Below, in pieces: positions 3,269 through 46,128 of a DNA stretch of 64,000 bases. The number at the start of each line of letters is the position of its first letter. Position 1 is the stretch's first letter. The position numbers and the translations under genes are program-made. Below the pieces are notes generated by a model. It saw only the letters and a list, made by a program, of their open reading frames with translations. It was not told the DNA's origin and searched no databases. The DNA lies in the IMG/VR virus record IMGVR_UViG_3300021520_000002, positions 186,001-250,000 of that record, one strand, 5' to 3'.

Positions 3269-3559
3269 TTATTTTCTATTATACCCATATTTATCTCGAA
3301 AAAAATTAAGATTATTTATAGACTTTTTTAAATTTTCAACATCTTGTTTTGGAGATGTTACTTGTTTTGGTATTTTCTGAACTGTTTTTTCTTTTTCATT
3401 ATAAAAATATCCTTTTGCTGGAAATTCTATTCTTTGTAATAAACGTGGTTTTGTTTCATAAGGTTCTTTTTCAAAACGAATTCCATTAAATGCTGGATTC
3501 CATACCCAATCAAGACCAGTGTTAGTTTCAAATTCAAATAAATACCCAATATTAATCAT
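3269..3559 (-). CDS. Hypothetical protein with MIxIxYLFE N-terminus shared with the neighbouring HD protein
   Basis: ORF with SD GGAG; N-terminal similarity to 2565-3251. Confidence 0.65.
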   Translation of the reverse strand: MINIGYLFEFETNTGLDWVWNPAFNGIRFEKEPYETKPRLLQRIEFPAKGYFYNEKEKTVQKIPKQVTSPKQDVENLKKSINNLNFFRDKYGYNRK

Positions 3560-3585
3560 AATTAAACTCCTTAAAATAAAATAAA

Positions 3586-3834
3586 TAAAAAAGTCTTGAG
3601 ACCCCTTTTCGGGATCTCAATATCACGGTCTTTCGACCGGTAGTAAAAGGTGACTAGTTCTTTTACCATCTCTTGAACCCATACATCTGGGTTAGACCGA
3701 TTCTGGAAAGGTTAGTTAAAAGATTAGTCAAATCTTTTTACACCTTTTCTCGTCCAGCAAGAGAGCTAGTTTCGAGACTATGATACAAAGTAATATATCA
3801 CTTAGGATATATTACCTTTCATAGACCTGTCTAT
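3586..3834 (-). ncRNA. Putative structured ncRNA (about 245 nt)
   Basis: Promoter motif at 3842-3851; at least 7 hairpins (e.g. CGGTC-GAAA-GACCG); terminal hairpin TTGAGATCCC/GGGGTCTCAA plus U-tract; no ORF in track. Confidence 0.6.
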
Positions 3835-3861
3835 TATATTAATTTCTATATGAAAAAGAAG

Positions 3862-4010
3862 AAAATAAAATAATGTTACTTTCGTAACATTATTCTTCCT
3901 GTTGGTGGGTTATGACCCCACCGGGTGCGCGATATCACACCTTACTAGTAGTGAGAATGACTCACTACAGATCAAATTTCATAGGCTTATATCGAGCCTC
4001 AAAATGATCA
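3862..4010 (-). ncRNA. Putative structured ncRNA (about 145 nt)
   Basis: Promoter motif at 4021-4030; hairpins GTAGTGAG/CTCACTAC and GGTGGG/CCCACC; terminator AATAATGTTAC-GAAA-GTAACATTATT plus U-tract. Confidence 0.6.
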
Positions 4011-4058
4011 TACTATATTAATTTCTATATCAAATCTTTGAATAACAAAAAGGCGGAG

Positions 4059-4766
4059 TTATCCGCCTGTTAATTGATTTATGATAAGCTGGATTTTCTC
4101 AGGGATAGGAGCATTGAGATCAGGTTCATTAGTTGATCTGTAAATATGTCTTAACTCAATAATTTCGTTAAGGCATATTCCACAACTATGAACATGTTTT
4201 TCAATAACTGTCCTTTCCTCAAGATCAGAGTCGAAGAAGGCATATTTAGCCAACAATTCTGGTTCAATATGTTTCTGATGTTTTTCTTTCATTAACCTAT
4301 TAAACCCAAGTTGGATAAGATGTGGTAACATTTTATCGTTTGGTCCTGCATCCGGAGGAATTTCAGTAAACATCCAATGTTTAGTTGTGATTAAGTCTTT
4401 TTTCCACCATTTCAATTTGTTCTTGTCATATTCATATTTGAATAGATAGAACTTAATTTTGAAAAGATGGTCTAAATCATCAATCTTTTTTACAACATCT
4501 TCCCGATATCCAGTCTGTTTAAAAGCCGCTTTAAGGTTCCATAGGAATGTAAAATTCCATAAGAACGAGAATATTAAATCAGGAACTTCATTGTAATCGT
4601 CTTTATCTATACCATAAATAATTTGATAGTTAACTGTCGATTCAAGATCGGAAAGAGTTTTTTTACACTGGATTATCATATCAATAGCGCGTGAGACCAA
4701 ATGTCTCATATCCACAAATACATATCCACGTTTTTCTAAATCTTTTATTACCAGATTTATTATCAT
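4059..4766 (-). CDS. Protein with C-terminal anti-sigma-like zinc finger (zf-HC2/ZAS)
   Basis: HIEPELLAKY...IEKHVHSCGIC matches H..HxxxCxxC; own promoter motif at 4831. Confidence 0.6.
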   Translation of the reverse strand: MIINLVIKDLEKRGYVFVDMRHLVSRAIDMIIQCKKTLSDLESTVNYQIIYGIDKDDYNEVPDLIFSFLWNFTFLWNLKAAFKQTGYREDVVKKIDDLDHLFKIKFYLFKYEYDKNKLKWWKKDLITTKHWMFTEIPPDAGPNDKMLPHLIQLGFNRLMKEKHQKHIEPELLAKYAFFDSDLEERTVIEKHVHSCGICLNEIIELRHIYRSTNEPDLNAPIPEKIQLIINQLTGG

Positions 4767-9212: not shown

Positions 9213-9495
9213 TTATTGTTTTGTAGCGGCATAAATTGCTGTTGCTGCATCAAGTGTTATTTCATAAGGACATTCATTTGCTGAAGTTACTTTTGTCCAA
9301 ATTGATTCAGCATGACGTGGATGCATTTTTGTTCTTGCTTCATTTTGAGCTTCTTTTGTGAAAAGTGATAATACAGCAGCTTGATCTCCATCATGATCCG
9401 CCCCCAATCTTGGTAAATCGAATGGACTAAGTCTCATACTTACTCCAGTCTTATCAACTCTTACATCTCCAGCTAACCAATTGTCTCTACTATTT
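9213..9495 (-). CDS. rpoC: RNA polymerase beta'-like subunit (second RNAP), exon 2, with catalytic GADHDGD
   Basis: Spliced junction KRDPV|NSRDNW...SPFDLPRLGADHDGDQ aligns with NRxPTLHR...NADFDGDQ. Confidence 0.85.
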
Positions 9496-10648
9496 CATTT
9501 GTGTTAATCTAAGATCGCGACTCTTAGACTTCTTCTTTTAAAATAAATAAAAGAAGAACCCATAGTTACCTATGGGATCAGACTATATCATCATCCTATT
9601 ATTTTCCTAAAAATTGTTCAAATAATTTAATATTATTCCATTTTTCATTTATTTCATCATTTTTTGATTCATTTTCAGTTTTTGATAATGGTCTAAGATT
9701 TTTTAATGACCAACATTTTTCAAAATTTGAATCTTCAAACGATTTGATATTAAAAGCTATTATTGGAACAATATGATCAATAACCCAATAATTACCATAA
9801 TTATTCCAATTCATTTTATCATCAAACTGTTTTTCAAGATGTTTCATAAGATCAGTAAGATTATATCCAACAAATTTTAACCAACTTTTTCCTTCTTTTT
9901 TACCTTTTAATATTCCCCAAATAGCTCTACTTACAAGTTTTCTTAATCTAAAAGAAGGATCTGTTTTGTATTTATTTTTGATGTATTCTTTTTTCTTTTC
10001 CATTATTTTATCTTTATTATTTTCAAAATATTTTCTATCTTGTTCTCTTTTTTTCTCTGGATGTTCTTTATAATAAGTTTTTTGTTTAGCTAAAAGTTCG
10101 TTTTTATTTTCTTCCCAATGAGCTTTTCGTTCATCCTGATGTTCTAAACAGTAATTTTTATGATATTCAACTCTTTCATCTTTGTGTTTTTCATAATATC
10201 GGTCAGTTTGAGCTTTATGTTTATCAGGATGATTTTTTCGATATTCTTTTACATTCAGATAATCACAAGGTTTACAATAATATTTATATTTTATTGTACC
10301 GTTTTTTGTTTTATATGCTGGAAATTCAATAATATCTTTTTCTTGTCCACATTTACCTCTACAAATTCTTGTTTTCATAATTTTATTATTCCTCCTAGAA
10401 ATTATTAAATGATGATATAGTCTAATTTAATAATTTCTATATAAGAATCTTAATTACTAAATAATAGGATGCCTCGCGCTTCCGTCCGCTTGGACGTACT
10501 CCCTTTCGGGATAGTCGTTACACCTTCAGTTAATATAGTTCGCAGCTATATTAAAAGCTTGGCTCGGTATTGTCCTATTTCTAGGAGTTTCACCGAATTC
10601 ACGAGGTTATTCGAATATCATTACTGATATAAGCCGCTTAATAGATTA
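9496..10648 (-). mobile_element. Group I self-splicing intron (1153 nt) with homing endonuclease in the P8 loop
   Basis: 5' splice U.G pair in P1 (CCGU/GCGG); P10 CUAUU/AAUAG; core elements GAAUUCGGUGAAA, AAUACCGAGCCAAG, GUAACGACUA, GAUAUAGUCU; P8 CAUCCUAUU/AAUAGGAUG; omega-G at 9496; removal restores frame. Confidence 0.9.
9599..10378 (-). CDS. Intron-encoded HNH homing endonuclease
   Basis: N-terminal Cys motifs; WVIDHIVP...NLRPL...NESKND; own SD and promoter motif at 10433. Confidence 0.88.
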   Translation of the reverse strand: MKTRICRGKCGQEKDIIEFPAYKTKNGTIKYKYYCKPCDYLNVKEYRKNHPDKHKAQTDRYYEKHKDERVEYHKNYCLEHQDERKAHWEENKNELLAKQKTYYKEHPEKKREQDRKYFENNKDKIMEKKKEYIKNKYKTDPSFRLRKLVSRAIWGILKGKKEGKSWLKFVGYNLTDLMKHLEKQFDDKMNWNNYGNYWVIDHIVPIIAFNIKSFEDSNFEKCWSLKNLRPLSKTENESKNDEINEKWNNIKLFEQFLGK

Positions 10649-11664
10649 ACGGGATCACGTTTATAGATCACAACTTTTCCATCAACAATTTCTTCTGCTA
10701 CATGAATGAAATATTGTTTAAGTTGTTCTGATACTATATTTGGTTTACTTATTAAACTTGCAAATAATCTCTTAAGATCATTTACATCTGGTGGAACTTC
10801 TGATTTCAGAAATTGTTGGATTATTCCAAGAGCACTACTATCTTTTTTTAAGATATAATTAATTGCAAATGGTTCATATAATTTTAAAACTACTTGCCAA
10901 GGCAATCCAACTGTTCCAAGTTTAAGAGTGTGATCTGTTGTAATAACTAATCTTGCCGAATAATCAGTAGTTTTTCTTAATAATCCACCTCTGATTAATC
11001 CAGATTTTCCTTTCATTCTACTTTTAATCCAGTTATTTGTATCTAATAAAGTATGTTGAATTTGTTCCATAATTGGGACTTTAATATCATCTGGTAATTC
11101 TGGAGCGAAATACTTAATATTTCTTATTAGAGAGCCATAAAATTCTGACAAATCTGAAAAGTTAACAATAGTTTGTCCAGATGTTTTACTAACGGCAAGA
11201 TCTCTAATTCCAGCTGGTAAAAGTATAAATTTATCAATAAAGATTTTATTTTTATTTTCTTTAATAAACTTCACATTTTCTGGTTTATTCTTTTTATATT
11301 TATCTAAATTAATTTTATCAAAAATTGATACTAAATAACCTATACCTGAATTTCCACTTGCATCTTCAATAACTTCTCCTGTTGCTGATAAACTATATTT
11401 CCCTTTATTCTGTAAAAGTTTAGATATGTTTGTATCTAATCCAGATACAATTGAATAAGCTTCAGGATGTATTAATTTTGTTTTCAAATTAACATATGCA
11501 AAAGTTTTTCTACGTTCTGCACTTCCGAATCTTCCAAAAATCTCTTCTGAAAATAATCCATTAGGATCAGTTTTTCCAACTTTTTCATAAAGACGAACAG
11601 TTGTTACTTCTTTTAGTTTGTTTTTTGTTATGAATTCATCAATATCTAATAATTTAAGTTTCAT
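10649..11664 (-). CDS. rpoC: RNA polymerase beta'-like subunit (second RNAP), exon 1; spliced product about 432 aa
   Basis: GLFSEEIFG, LPAGIRD, KGKSGLIRGGLLRKTTDYSARLVI. Confidence 0.88.
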
Positions 11665-21988: not shown

Positions 21989-22062
21989 TGGGAATGGATG
22001 GAATTGAACCAACAGTCTCTGGATTATCGATCCAGTGCTTCAGCCATTTAAGCTACATTCCC
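21989..22062 (-). tRNA. tRNA-Ile(GAT), no encoded CCA, atypical C33
   Basis: Acceptor GGGAATG/CATTCCC-A; anticodon arm CTGGA-TCGATAA-TCCAG; TTCAA T-loop. Confidence 0.8.
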
Positions 22063-46053: not shown

Positions 46054-46128
46054 TGGTGCCCAAGGTGAGAATTGAACTCACGACCTAGTGTTTTAGAGGC
46101 ACTCGCTCTACAACTGAGCTACTTAGGC
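46054..46128 (-). tRNA. Amber suppressor tRNA (anticodon CTA) with encoded CCA
   Basis: Acceptor GCCTAAG/CTTGGGC-A-CCA; D arm GCTC/GAGC; anticodon arm AGTGC-CTCTAAA-ACACT; T arm GTGAG-TTCAATT-CTCAC. Confidence 0.85.

What the first reader, a model, noticed from the sequence alone, without database searches (positions are those of the whole stretch)
9580..10423. 15-nt antisense copy of the intron catalytic core in the endonuclease leader
Seen: 10409-10423 and 9580-9594 are a perfect 15-bp inverted repeat. On the RNA, AGACUAUAUCAUCAU sits between the internal promoter (10433) and the HNH SD and is complementary to AUGAUGAUAUAGUCU, the P8-3'/J8-7/P7 strand. Inference: a competing helix that could block P7 and splicing, coupling RNAP maturation to endonuclease expression or translation.
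Basis: partly seen in the sequence, partly recalled or inferred. Interest (0 to 1): 0.6.

Follow-up and report, generated by a model that had tools for sequence, protein, structure and literature searches.

The report
Anti-ribozyme leader of intron endonuclease gene
A jumbo-phage self-splicing intron carries, just upstream of its homing-endonuclease gene, a conserved short sequence antisense to the ribozyme's catalytic core; it is part of a portable promoter/hairpin cassette that probably keeps "splice the RNA" and "translate the endonuclease" apart.

Summary
Window 10409-10423 and 9580-9594 are an exact 15-bp inverted repeat. On the minus-strand RNA the leader copy is antisense to the last 3 nt of P8-3', all of J8/7 and all of P7-3' of a group I intron (10648-9496) that splits an RNA polymerase beta'-like gene.

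For this specific target the match is far beyond chance: about 8.5e-6 such matches are expected. It is conserved. Six intron lineages, at three insertion sites and with at least two endonuclease families, keep a 10-15-nt complement, and a seventh keeps the leader element but its J8/7 was not recovered. One clean compensatory change (A-U to U-A) occurs, and one lineage carries an uncompensated mismatch. ORF-less, endonuclease-deleted and other-leader relatives lack the element.

The element sits in the 14-nt loop of a perfect 15-bp hairpin. The 5' arm of that hairpin is a copy of the phage's own promoter consensus (65 copies in the genome), and its 3' arm abuts the Shine-Dalgarno sequence.

My reading is a T4 I-TevI-like "promoter-in-hairpin" cassette with an added anti-core. 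The roughly 20-bp alternative helix excludes P7 and P8. It is predicted to form with near certainty in promoter-initiated endonuclease mRNA and to be roughly iso-energetic with the native fold in pre-mRNA.

The function is inferred, not shown. I rate this a new variant of a known kind, with interest about 0.6.

The parts
9496..10648 (-). Group I intron (IA-type, with P7.1/P7.2), 1153 nt, in an RNA polymerase beta'-like gene. Exon 1 ends at U10649, omega-G is 9496, and exon 2 starts at 9495.
   Evidence: Rfam RF00028 scores 57 bits against a gathering score of 50. There is a U.G pair at the 5' splice site. The joined exons read ..KRDPVNSRDNW.., matching the intron-less homolog L096 ..KRDPVENRDSW... 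Exon 1 hits Pfam Rpb1 domain 2.
10511..10518 (-). P7 5' strand, the native partner of 9580-9586.
   Evidence: Rfam alignment; duplex energy -5.9 kcal/mol.
10459..10471 (-). P8 5' strand.
   Evidence: A 13-bp perfect complement of 9592-9604. P8 differs in sequence and length but stays paired in relatives, e.g. 18 bp in L100.
10443..10457 (-). Upstream occluder segments, predicted to pair with the 3' half of the SD (10448-10443 with 10393-10388) and with the start-codon region (10457-10452 with 10382-10377) in read-through RNA.
   Evidence: Leader MFE. An equivalent SD-pairing segment is predicted in all 4 site-1 lineages.
10425..10444 (-). Internal promoter, a copy of the phage promoter consensus (core ATATAGAAAT at 10433-10442).
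   Evidence: The genome has 65 exact cores against 7 expected, with a shared flanking consensus. 39 of 65 are followed by an SD plus start codon within 60 nt.
10396..10439 (-). Perfect 15-bp hairpin (arms 10439-10425 and 10410-10396) with a 14-nt loop (10424-10411). The 5' arm is the promoter's downstream half and the 3' arm abuts the SD.
   Evidence: the repeat finder I15; -10.3 kcal/mol. The top of the stem covaries across lineages: AAAU/AUUU, AGGU/ACCU, AGGG/CCCU.
10409..10423 (-). Anti-core 15-mer (the alternative-helix strand extends over 10426-10407), antisense to P8-3' end/J8-7/P7-3'.
   Evidence: It is conserved in relatives.
10391..10395 (-). Shine-Dalgarno GGAGG of the endonuclease ORF.
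   Evidence: Read from the sequence.
9599..10378 (-). Homing-endonuclease ORF (259 aa, His-Me/HNH, 'endonuclease VII-like'). Its stop codon (9601-9599) lies inside the P8 3' strand.
   Evidence: the ORF listing; PHROG phrog_1035 at 1e-10; no Pfam hit; tblastn hits are annotated HNH/endonuclease VII.
9592..9604 (-). P8 3' strand.
9580..9594 (-). Target of the anti-core: the last 3 nt of P8-3' (9594-9592), J8/7 (9591-9586) and P7-3' (9585-9580). The alternative helix extends over 9596-9577.
   Evidence: Rfam alignment to the conserved core element. The same strand is near-invariant in 76 related introns.
9559..9576 (-). P9 hairpin.
   Evidence: Rfam alignment.

Best explanation
The 15-mer is the 'anti-core' of a portable expression cassette that precedes homing-endonuclease ORFs inserted in the P8 loop of this phage intron family. 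The cassette runs: phage promoter; a stem whose 5' arm is the promoter itself; the anti-core (complement of the P8-3' end, J8/7 and P7-3'); the 3' arm; the SD.

Two RNA species result.

(1) Read-through pre-mRNA from the upstream gene promoter contains everything. The local hairpin forms first and, together with two short upstream segments, closes the SD and AUG. About 800 nt later P8 and P7 form and the intron splices. This is the T4 I-TevI logic of no ribosomes in the core before splicing.

(2) RNA started at the internal promoter lacks P7-5', P8-5', the occluders and probably most of the hairpin's 5' arm. Its first 15-20 nt pair with the now orphan J8/7-P7 strand that begins right after the stop codon. 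This gives a roughly 20-bp helix that closes the ORF into a panhandle and leaves the SD open.

So the helix is a true alternative to P7/P8. Its most likely role is to define the endonuclease-mRNA fold: to neutralise or occupy the half-ribozyme, protect the 5' end and open the SD. It may also capture pre-mRNA or excised-intron molecules that switch out of the catalytic fold. A simple brake on polymerase maturation is less likely.

Shown here: the complementarity, its conservation, the covariation, the promoter motif, and the hairpin with its covariation. Inferred: the transcription start site, which RNA forms the helix in vivo, and the benefit.
For: The complement is exact and non-random.

The same position in the leader holds 15, 15, 14 and 13(+G.U) nt complements in four lineages of the same intron whose endonucleases are only 53-85% identical. 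None of 200 simulations per lineage reached the observed length. Where J8/7 differs (U to A at the position of window 9590), the leader differs in a complementary way (A to U at the position of 10413).

The same cassette precedes different endonucleases (Pfam HNH_3) in a second intron of the polymerase gene (L120, L097) and in an intron of another gene (L125). The complements there are 10+3, 11 and 13+2 G.U nt, and the 9-nt spacing from the promoter core is constant. Alternative-helix energy is similar across lineages, at -26 to -34 kcal/mol in 5 of 6.

The element is absent (maximum 6-10 nt, which is chance level) from 4 introns with related endonucleases but other leaders, from 76 other introns of the same core family, from the ORF-less intron at the same site (L122) and from an endonuclease-deleted remnant (L124).

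Promoter: 65 copies against 7 expected. In two genes the SD starts within or 2 nt after the 20-mer, so transcription must start inside or at the end of the motif.

Folding: in promoter-initiated RNA the alternative helix has P of about 1.0 for any start from 10437 to 10420. In pre-mRNA the constrained ensembles are -143.4 (native) against -144.6 (alternative), before adding P7 (-5.9) and tertiary energy.

The T4 precedent for a promoter inside an SD-occluding hairpin, and for translation interfering with splicing, is reviewed in PMC2988022 and PMC3073962.
Against: The transcription start, the existence of the two RNA species and splicing itself are all inferred.

If transcription starts at the G of TATA|G (10437), 13 of the 15 nt of the 5' arm are in the mRNA. 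The simple picture of a missing arm then weakens, although the alternative helix still wins in the fold.

The gene's own promoter (window 12709) is of the same class as the internal one, so there is no obvious early/late separation as in T4.

One lineage (L120, site 2) has an uncompensated A x A mismatch.

Covariation rests on few independent events. For the central pair, a rough estimate of my own arithmetic (1/14 x 1/3, no tool run) gives p of about 0.02-0.05.

I cannot name a proven benefit of a 5'/3' panhandle for the endonuclease mRNA.
Confidence: 0.45

Rival explanations
1. Cis-acting splicing brake or switch in the pre-mRNA. The loop-displayed anti-core captures J8/7-P7-3' as it emerges and blocks P7. 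It then unzips the hairpin and frees the SD, so a fraction of pre-mRNA or excised intron becomes endonuclease mRNA at the expense of, or after, splicing.
For: The anti-core is displayed in a 14-nt loop, the classical presentation for fast antisense pairing. Loop-only pairing is worth up to -18.8 kcal/mol against -5.9 for P7. The native and alternative ensembles are within about 1 kcal/mol in the window's intron in a nested model. In the alternative fold the SD is unpaired, while in the native leader fold it is paired. Conservation and covariation fit this reading as well as they fit the best explanation.
Against: The host gene is an essential polymerase subunit, so a constitutive competitor of P7 should be costly. 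In L100 and L113 the native set is 7-12 kcal/mol more stable than the alternative helix, so an equilibrium switch is not conserved. In L097 site 2 the 3' part of the anti-core is masked in a stem with a promoter-derived J8/7 mimic, which suggests it is kept silent in read-through RNA. An internal promoter makes translation from pre-mRNA unnecessary.
Confidence: 0.25
2. Processing site. The conserved helix of about 20-21 bp (or the 15+5-bp leader stem) is a substrate for a double-strand-specific RNase (RNase III class). Cleavage would cut the endonuclease mRNA free of exon 2 and downstream genes.
For: Helix length (20-21 bp) and energy (-26 to -30 kcal/mol) are kept in four lineages even though the sequences at its inner end differ. 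The helix brackets the ORF exactly, from 3 nt before the SD region to just after the stop.
Against: There is no direct evidence. L097 site 2 has only an 11-15-bp helix (-15.6 kcal/mol). The host is unknown, so its RNases are unknown too.
Confidence: 0.08
3. No RNA function. The complement arose once, for example by a small inverted duplication when the cassette was built. It persists because each copy is constrained separately, the core strand by catalysis and the leader copy as initially transcribed or promoter-proximal sequence.
For: The invariant part of the leader element (AGACUAUAUC) faces the most invariant part of the core. It keeps a constant 9-nt spacing from the promoter core. One lineage tolerates a mismatch.
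Against: None of the other 64 promoters in the genome carries this downstream sequence. The A-U to U-A compensatory change, the G.U-compatible changes, and the extra compensatory pairs at the 5' end in L125 all point to selection on pairing. The element is found only where a ribozyme core lies downstream.
Confidence: 0.1
4. DNA-level element: an operator or recognition site bound by the endonuclease or a phage protein (as with the I-TevI autorepression operator), or terminal inverted repeats of a mobile ORF cassette.
For: In T4, I-TevI binds an operator overlapping its own late promoter (PMC2988022). Here the repeat flanks the ORF and overlaps the promoter region.
Against: The T4 operator mimics the homing site. 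Here the leader shows no similarity to the exon junction: the best match is 12/20, below the typical shuffle value of 13. The same element precedes at least two unrelated endonuclease families, so it is not an enzyme-specific operator. The right-hand 'repeat' is simply the universal intron core, present in ORF-less introns too.
Confidence: 0.07

Closest known systems
Phage T4 intron endonuclease leaders (I-TevI, I-TevII, I-TevIII): a middle or late promoter inside the intron plus an RBS-sequestering hairpin that only forms on read-through transcripts (Gott et al. 1988; Gibb & Edgell 2010; reviewed in PMC2988022 and PMC3073962)
   Same: Both have an internal phage promoter overlapping the 5' side of a stem-loop that adjoins or occludes the SD. 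In both the ORF sits in a peripheral loop with its 3' end reaching a core helix (here the stop codon lies in P8-3'). The rationale is the same: ribosomes in the core would hurt splicing.
   Different: No complement to the catalytic core is mentioned for the T4 hairpins in the reviews read. Here the hairpin loop is a 13-15-nt antisense of J8/7-P7-3', and the resulting helix excludes P7 and P8. The internal promoter is of the same class as the host gene's promoter, so temporal separation is not evident. The I-TevI-type homing-site operator was tested and is absent.
DiGIR1 lariat-capping ribozyme on/off switch in the Didymium twin-ribozyme intron (Nielsen et al. 2009, cited in PMC4167309; details from my own knowledge)
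   Same: A ribozyme core strand can pair alternatively with the leader of the downstream endonuclease mRNA. Ribozyme activity and folding of the endonuclease mRNA 5' end are therefore mutually exclusive.
   Different: It is a eukaryotic nuclear rDNA intron with a separate branching ribozyme, and its purpose is 5' capping and release of the mRNA. It has no promoter, no SD, a different core element, and no sequence relationship to this case.
Allosteric group I intron controlled by a c-di-GMP riboswitch in Clostridioides (mentioned in PMC3073962)
   Same: Alternative base-pairing next to a group I core decides the splicing outcome and whether a ribosome-binding site is usable.
   Different: It is ligand-controlled, acts on splice-site choice, and involves no endonuclease gene or internal promoter.
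Kinetic traps and alternative helices of group I ribozymes (Tetrahymena Alt-P3, td exon-intron mispairing; my own knowledge)
   Same: A non-native helix competes with a core helix.
   Different: Those are accidental misfolds. This helix is conserved, covaries and travels with a gene cassette.

Membership tests
Group I self-splicing intron (IA-type phage intron) | Conserved core secondary structure (P3-P9, R/S elements) | tested here: met
   RF00028 scores 57 bits (gathering 50) for the 5' part and 26 bits for the 3' part, with the ORF looped out of P8. The core motif is shared with 79 viral contigs.
Group I self-splicing intron (IA-type phage intron) | U.G at the 5' splice site, terminal G, and exon joining that restores the host reading frame | tested here: met
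   U10649.G lies in P1, omega-G is 9496, and the joined frame matches the intron-less homologs L096 and P0122.
Group I self-splicing intron (IA-type phage intron) | Self-splicing activity | not testable with these tools
HNH / His-Me finger homing endonuclease | Profile match to an HNH-type nuclease family | tested here: inconclusive
   No Pfam hit at E <= 0.01. PHROG 'endonuclease VII' hits at 1e-10. tblastn relatives are annotated HNH/endonuclease VII. A ..DH..P..N..N-type motif is visible near the C-terminus.
T4-type promoter-in-hairpin translational control of intron endonucleases | Functional promoter inside the intron, upstream of the ORF | tested here: inconclusive
   There is a perfect copy of a 65-member genome-wide promoter-like motif. 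Promoter activity and the start site are not measured.
T4-type promoter-in-hairpin translational control of intron endonucleases | SD/AUG sequestered by a structure that needs sequence upstream of the internal start site | tested here: met
   This rests on prediction only. Leader MFEs pair the SD with the segment just 5' of or overlapping the promoter in all 4 site-1 lineages, and the stem covaries.
I-TevI-type autorepression operator | Sequence at the promoter resembling the endonuclease's homing site | tested here: not met
   The best match is 12/20 to the exon junction on either strand; shuffles typically give 13.
Cis antisense / alternative-helix switch against a ribozyme core | Complementarity beyond chance that is mutually exclusive with a catalytic helix | tested here: met
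   The 15-nt exact match has an expectation of 8.5e-6 and uses the same nucleotides as P7-3', J8/7 and the end of P8-3'.
Cis antisense / alternative-helix switch against a ribozyme core | Conservation with compensatory change in relatives | tested here: met
   Six lineages keep the complement and one has no recovered J8/7. There is one A-U to U-A double change, G.U-compatible single changes, and extra compensatory pairs in L125. There is one counter-example with an A x A mismatch.
Cis antisense / alternative-helix switch against a ribozyme core | Measurable effect on splicing or translation | not testable with these tools
   This needs bench work.

The most novel reading that the evidence does not exclude
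Homing-endonuclease cassettes of this phage group carry a mobile 'anti-ribozyme'. It is an antisense to the near-universal J8/7-P7 strand that works in any intron of the family the cassette invades. It makes the catalytic fold and endonuclease translation mutually exclusive, acting as a built-in RNA switch that settles the ribosome-versus-ribozyme conflict and could also silence the ribozyme in cis or in trans once the endonuclease promoter fires.
Probability: 0.3. Interest if true: 0.75.

Novelty: new variant of a known kind. Interest (0 to 1): 0.62.

Why it matters
How a protein gene can live inside a ribozyme without ribosomes wrecking the fold is a long-standing question for mobile introns. 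T4 gave one answer: a late promoter plus an RBS-hiding hairpin.

Here the same scheme carries an extra, conserved element aimed directly at the catalytic core. It travels with different endonuclease genes between introns. If the anti-core acts as proposed, it is a natural, compact, sequence-programmable off-switch for a group I ribozyme. It would also be direct evidence that endonuclease cassettes co-evolve with the RNA they invade.

The case is also directly testable. Natural variant pairs (A-U versus U-A at 10413/9590) supply ready-made mutant and compensatory constructs that the ribozyme is known to tolerate.

Tried and rejected
- Rfam at gathering and at E <= 0.1 over the whole window misses the intron because of the looped-out ORF. 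It is found only when the 1.5-kb region is searched alone.
- Metagenome pattern scan for the leader re-found only the window's own genome and the L097 contig. The same pattern found nothing in viral contigs.
- The genome-contig scan gave 5 chance matches that are not introns. A looser viral scan gave 64 loci, none intronic except L125.
- The search for related loci with the L120 endonuclease found nothing.
- Two contig look-ups returned no DNA.
- The tail of the L123 lineage (loop variant ..AUGUCACC) could not be recovered, so its predicted covarying J8/7 is untested.
- The test for a T7-like single-subunit RNA polymerase in the genome is uninformative, because the control genomes did not ring either.
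- The I-TevI-type homing-site operator was tested and rejected.
- Chance is rejected for this specific target. However, a 15-nt inverted repeat as such is unremarkable in this AT-rich DNA.
- I did not use the count of structure pairs, because the structure string for a 1.2-kb alignment would have been a long typed text. Pair tables were made in scripts instead.
- Nielsen et al. 2009 is not held in the library.
Full report
SETTING. The window is bases 186,001-250,000 of a 285,572-bp IMG/VR phage record (29% GC, estimated 95% complete). All genes at the finding are on the minus strand.

An ORF at 11664-10621 encodes the N-terminal part of an RNA polymerase beta'-like protein (Pfam Rpb1 domain 2). 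It is interrupted by a group I intron. Rfam RF00028 scores 57 bits (gathering score 50) when the region is searched alone, and the 3' core is found as a second hit. The two hits are separated by a 259-codon ORF looped out of P8.

The splice sites follow from the U.G pair in P1, the terminal G, and comparison with intron-less homologs. Exon 1 ends at 10649, the intron is 10648-9496, and exon 2 starts at 9495. The joined protein reads ..KRDPVNSRDNW.. against ..KRDPVENRDSW.. in L096. The closest homolog without the intron is 88% identical. The intron lies about 30 codons before the catalytic ..DHDGD.. motif.

THE OBSERVATION. Positions 9580-9594 and 10409-10423 are exact reverse complements. On the RNA, 9594-9580 comprises the last three bases of the P8 3' strand, the six bases of J8/7 and the six bases of P7-3'. 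P8 is a 13-bp long-range helix, 10471-10459 with 9604-9592. The leader copy is antisense to that strand. The pairing extends to 18 bp with one G.U and to about 20 bp in duplex folding (-25.9 to -26.6 kcal/mol).

A perfect 15-nt inverted repeat within 1.5 kb is not unusual in this AT-rich DNA: 1.3 are expected per window. A complement of this particular 24-nt core strand inside the 854-nt loop is unusual: 8.5e-6 are expected for 15 nt and 1.7e-4 for 13 nt.

(a) The 15-mer lies almost entirely in the 14-nt loop (10424-10411) of a perfect 15-bp hairpin, 10439-10425 with 10410-10396 (I15; -10.3 kcal/mol). The 3' arm of that hairpin ends one base before the SD GGAGG (10395-10391).

(b) The 5' arm is part of a 20-nt motif (10444-10425) that is a promoter consensus of this phage.
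- The 10-nt core ATATAGAAAT occurs 65 times in the genome against 7 expected, with shared upstream and downstream flanks.
- 39 of the 65 copies are followed within 60 nt by an SD and a start codon.
- In two genes the SD starts inside the motif or 2 nt after it, so transcription must start within or at the end of the motif.
- The polymerase gene itself lies downstream of such a promoter at window 12709.

(c) In the predicted leader fold, two short segments upstream of the promoter pair with the 3' half of the SD and with the start-codon region (10448-10443 with 10393-10388; 10457-10452 with 10382-10377). An equivalent SD-pairing segment is predicted in every relative of the same intron.

(d) The stop codon of the endonuclease ORF (9601-9599) lies inside the P8 3' strand.

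This is the design described for the T4 intron endonucleases: a promoter inside the intron, an RBS-hiding structure that needs sequence upstream of that promoter, and an ORF whose end reaches the core. In T4, premature translation reduces splicing (PMC2988022 and PMC3073962).

RELATIVES. The core motif is shared by 79 viral contigs. Nearly all have a short P8 hairpin and the same J8/7-P7 strand. The 9594-9580 copy is therefore the ancestral, catalytically constrained one, and the leader copy is derived. None of 76 usable introns has a complement of 11 nt or more to its own J8/7-P7 strand within 2.5 kb.

Protein searches with the endonuclease and with exon 1 gave orthologous introns at the same site in related phages:
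- L097: endonuclease 85% identical, leader identical.
- L100 and L113: endonucleases 53-54% identical.
- L123: a different ORF; the contig ends before the 3' core.
- L122: an ORF-less intron with a short P8.
- L124: a remnant in which promoter, hairpin, anti-core, SD and most of the ORF are deleted, but an 18-bp P8 remains.

The longest leader complement to J8/7-P7 is 15, 15, 14 and 13 nt (plus a G.U) in WIN, L097, L100 and L113. None of 200 simulations reached the observed length in any of them. It is 6-7 nt (chance level) in four introns that carry related endonucleases in P8 but have a different leader: the paralog in the same genome, L114, L115 and L033.

Where J8/7 reads ..GAAGAU.. instead of ..GAUGAU.., the leader reads ..AUCUUC.. 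instead of ..AUCAUC... This is an A-U to U-A compensatory change at the pair 10413/9590. The hairpin stem also covaries, with AAAU/AUUU, AGGU/ACCU and AGGG/CCCU at its top.

THE CASSETTE IS PORTABLE. The same unit precedes endonucleases of a different family (Pfam HNH_3). The unit is the promoter core, a 9-nt spacer, AGACUAUAUC.., the 3' arm and the SD. It occurs in a second intron that splits GD|HDGD 100 nt downstream in L120 and L097, and in an intron of another gene on the contig that also holds L096 (L125).
- L125 pairs 13 Watson-Crick plus two G.U, and has extra compensatory pairs at the 5' end. Its alternative helix is -34.3 kcal/mol.
- L097 site 2 keeps 11 nt. There the 3' part of the anti-core is itself the 3' arm of a 9-bp stem with promoter-derived sequence that mimics J8/7.
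- L120 site 2 has the window-type loop facing the other J8/7 type, giving 10 bp, an A x A mismatch, then 3 bp (-26.4 kcal/mol with flanking pairs). This is an uncompensated counter-example.

In summary, the element occurs only where an endonuclease ORF with this promoter sits upstream of a ribozyme core. None of the other 64 promoters in the genome has it.

ENERGETICS. For the window's intron the native set (hairpin -10.3, P8 -13.9 to -14.9, P7 -5.9) sums to about -30 to -31 kcal/mol. The alternative helix is -26 to -28.

In a nested model of the pre-mRNA with the ORF interior removed, the constrained ensembles are -143.4 (native, without P7, which is a pseudoknot partner) and -144.6 (alternative). 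The two folds are therefore close in the window's intron. In L100 and L113 the native set is 7-12 kcal/mol better, while the alternative helix keeps the same strength.

In an RNA that starts anywhere from 10437 to 10420, the alternative helix has a pairing probability of about 1 and the SD is unpaired.

INTERPRETATION. Selection on the leader-core complementarity is well supported, and so is the hairpin.

Which RNA uses the helix is inferred. I favour the promoter-initiated endonuclease mRNA (confidence about 0.45). That RNA lacks P7-5', P8-5' and the SD occluders. Its 5' end can pair only with the orphan core strand that starts right after the stop codon, which closes the ORF in a roughly 20-bp panhandle and leaves the SD open. 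In read-through RNA the hairpin and the native core are favoured and the SD is closed. Three observations fit this: the constant 9-nt spacing of the anti-core from the promoter core, the masking of the anti-core in L097 site 2, and the non-conserved energy balance in pre-mRNA.

The antisense is loop-displayed, and the two folds are near iso-energetic in the window's own intron.

The minor rivals are:
- An RNase III-type processing site.
- A relic kept by two independent constraints.
- A DNA-level site. An I-TevI-like homing-site operator was tested and not found.

NOVELTY. The promoter-in-hairpin control is known from T4. A ribozyme strand pairing alternatively with an endonuclease mRNA leader is known from the eukaryotic DiGIR1 switch. 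I found no description of a conserved antisense to J8/7-P7 built into a phage endonuclease leader and travelling with the cassette in the papers searched, but that search was limited. I rate it a new variant of a known kind.

LIMITS. The evidence is computational only, and no transcript data could be obtained. The start site is uncertain. Covariation rests on few independent events, and one lineage is mismatched. One informative lineage (L123) lacks its 3' half.

Noticed in passing
Window minus strand at about 2551, 3853, 4032, 5099, 6427, 10444, 12709, 29020, 49508, 58415, 58448, 63738, 63917, and genome-wide: A phage promoter-like consensus (T-rich upstream block, then T[CT]ATATAGAAAT[AT]AT..) has 65 exact cores against 7 expected. 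Most sit in intergenic DNA ahead of an SD plus start codon. The core resembles the ..TATAGAAG.. initiation region of SP6-type promoters. No T7-like polymerase gene was detected, but that test was uninformative.
   Followed up: partly
Window minus strand at about 12690-12480, 6407-6200, 5079-4860, 4012-3870, 3833-3600: The strongest promoter sub-class (TCATATAGAAATTAATATA[AG]) is followed by 150-250 nt of GC-richer (33-44%) non-coding sequence before the next gene or promoter. These are candidate structured leaders or small RNAs. None has an Rfam match.
   Followed up: no
G000:C1 about 89,070-90,260 (+), which is L002 about 1470-2660: A paralogous group I intron in the same genome has a core 79% identical and a related endonuclease in P8. 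P8 covaries, but the leader is different: it has a short upstream ORF-like AUGGAGGACAG.. element shared with L033, L114 and L115. It has no anti-core.
   Followed up: partly
L122, L124, L096, L100, L113, L123 (same site of the polymerase gene): A full homing-endonuclease life-cycle series is visible at one insertion site. It runs from the intron-less allele, through the ORF-less intron and the endonuclease-bearing intron, to a remnant with the cassette and most of the ORF deleted.
   Followed up: partly
L120 3594-4660 and L097 about 3490-4560: A second group I intron splits the catalytic GD|HDGD motif 100 nt downstream of the first site. It leaves a 100-nt exon between two introns (L120 3494-3593). 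This intron carries an HNH_3-family endonuclease behind the same leader cassette.
   Followed up: partly
L096 4086-4328: A related phage has an ORF-less group I intron (RF00028, 85 bits) near the 5' end of the same polymerase gene and none at the window's site.
   Followed up: no
L107, leader region (equivalent to window about 10519-10517): One otherwise identical metagenomic copy has AAC changed to TTT immediately 5' of P7 (J6/7 and the bulged C). This is either a natural variant that should impair P7 or an assembly error.
   Followed up: no
Window 9599-9604: The endonuclease ORF ends inside the P8 3' strand ('core creep'). In L100 the stop lies 3 nt before P8. A terminating ribosome would cover J8/7 in either case.
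   Followed up: no
Window 46057-46128 and 21989-22062 (minus strand): Two tRNA genes (Rfam 66 and 65 bits).
   Followed up: no
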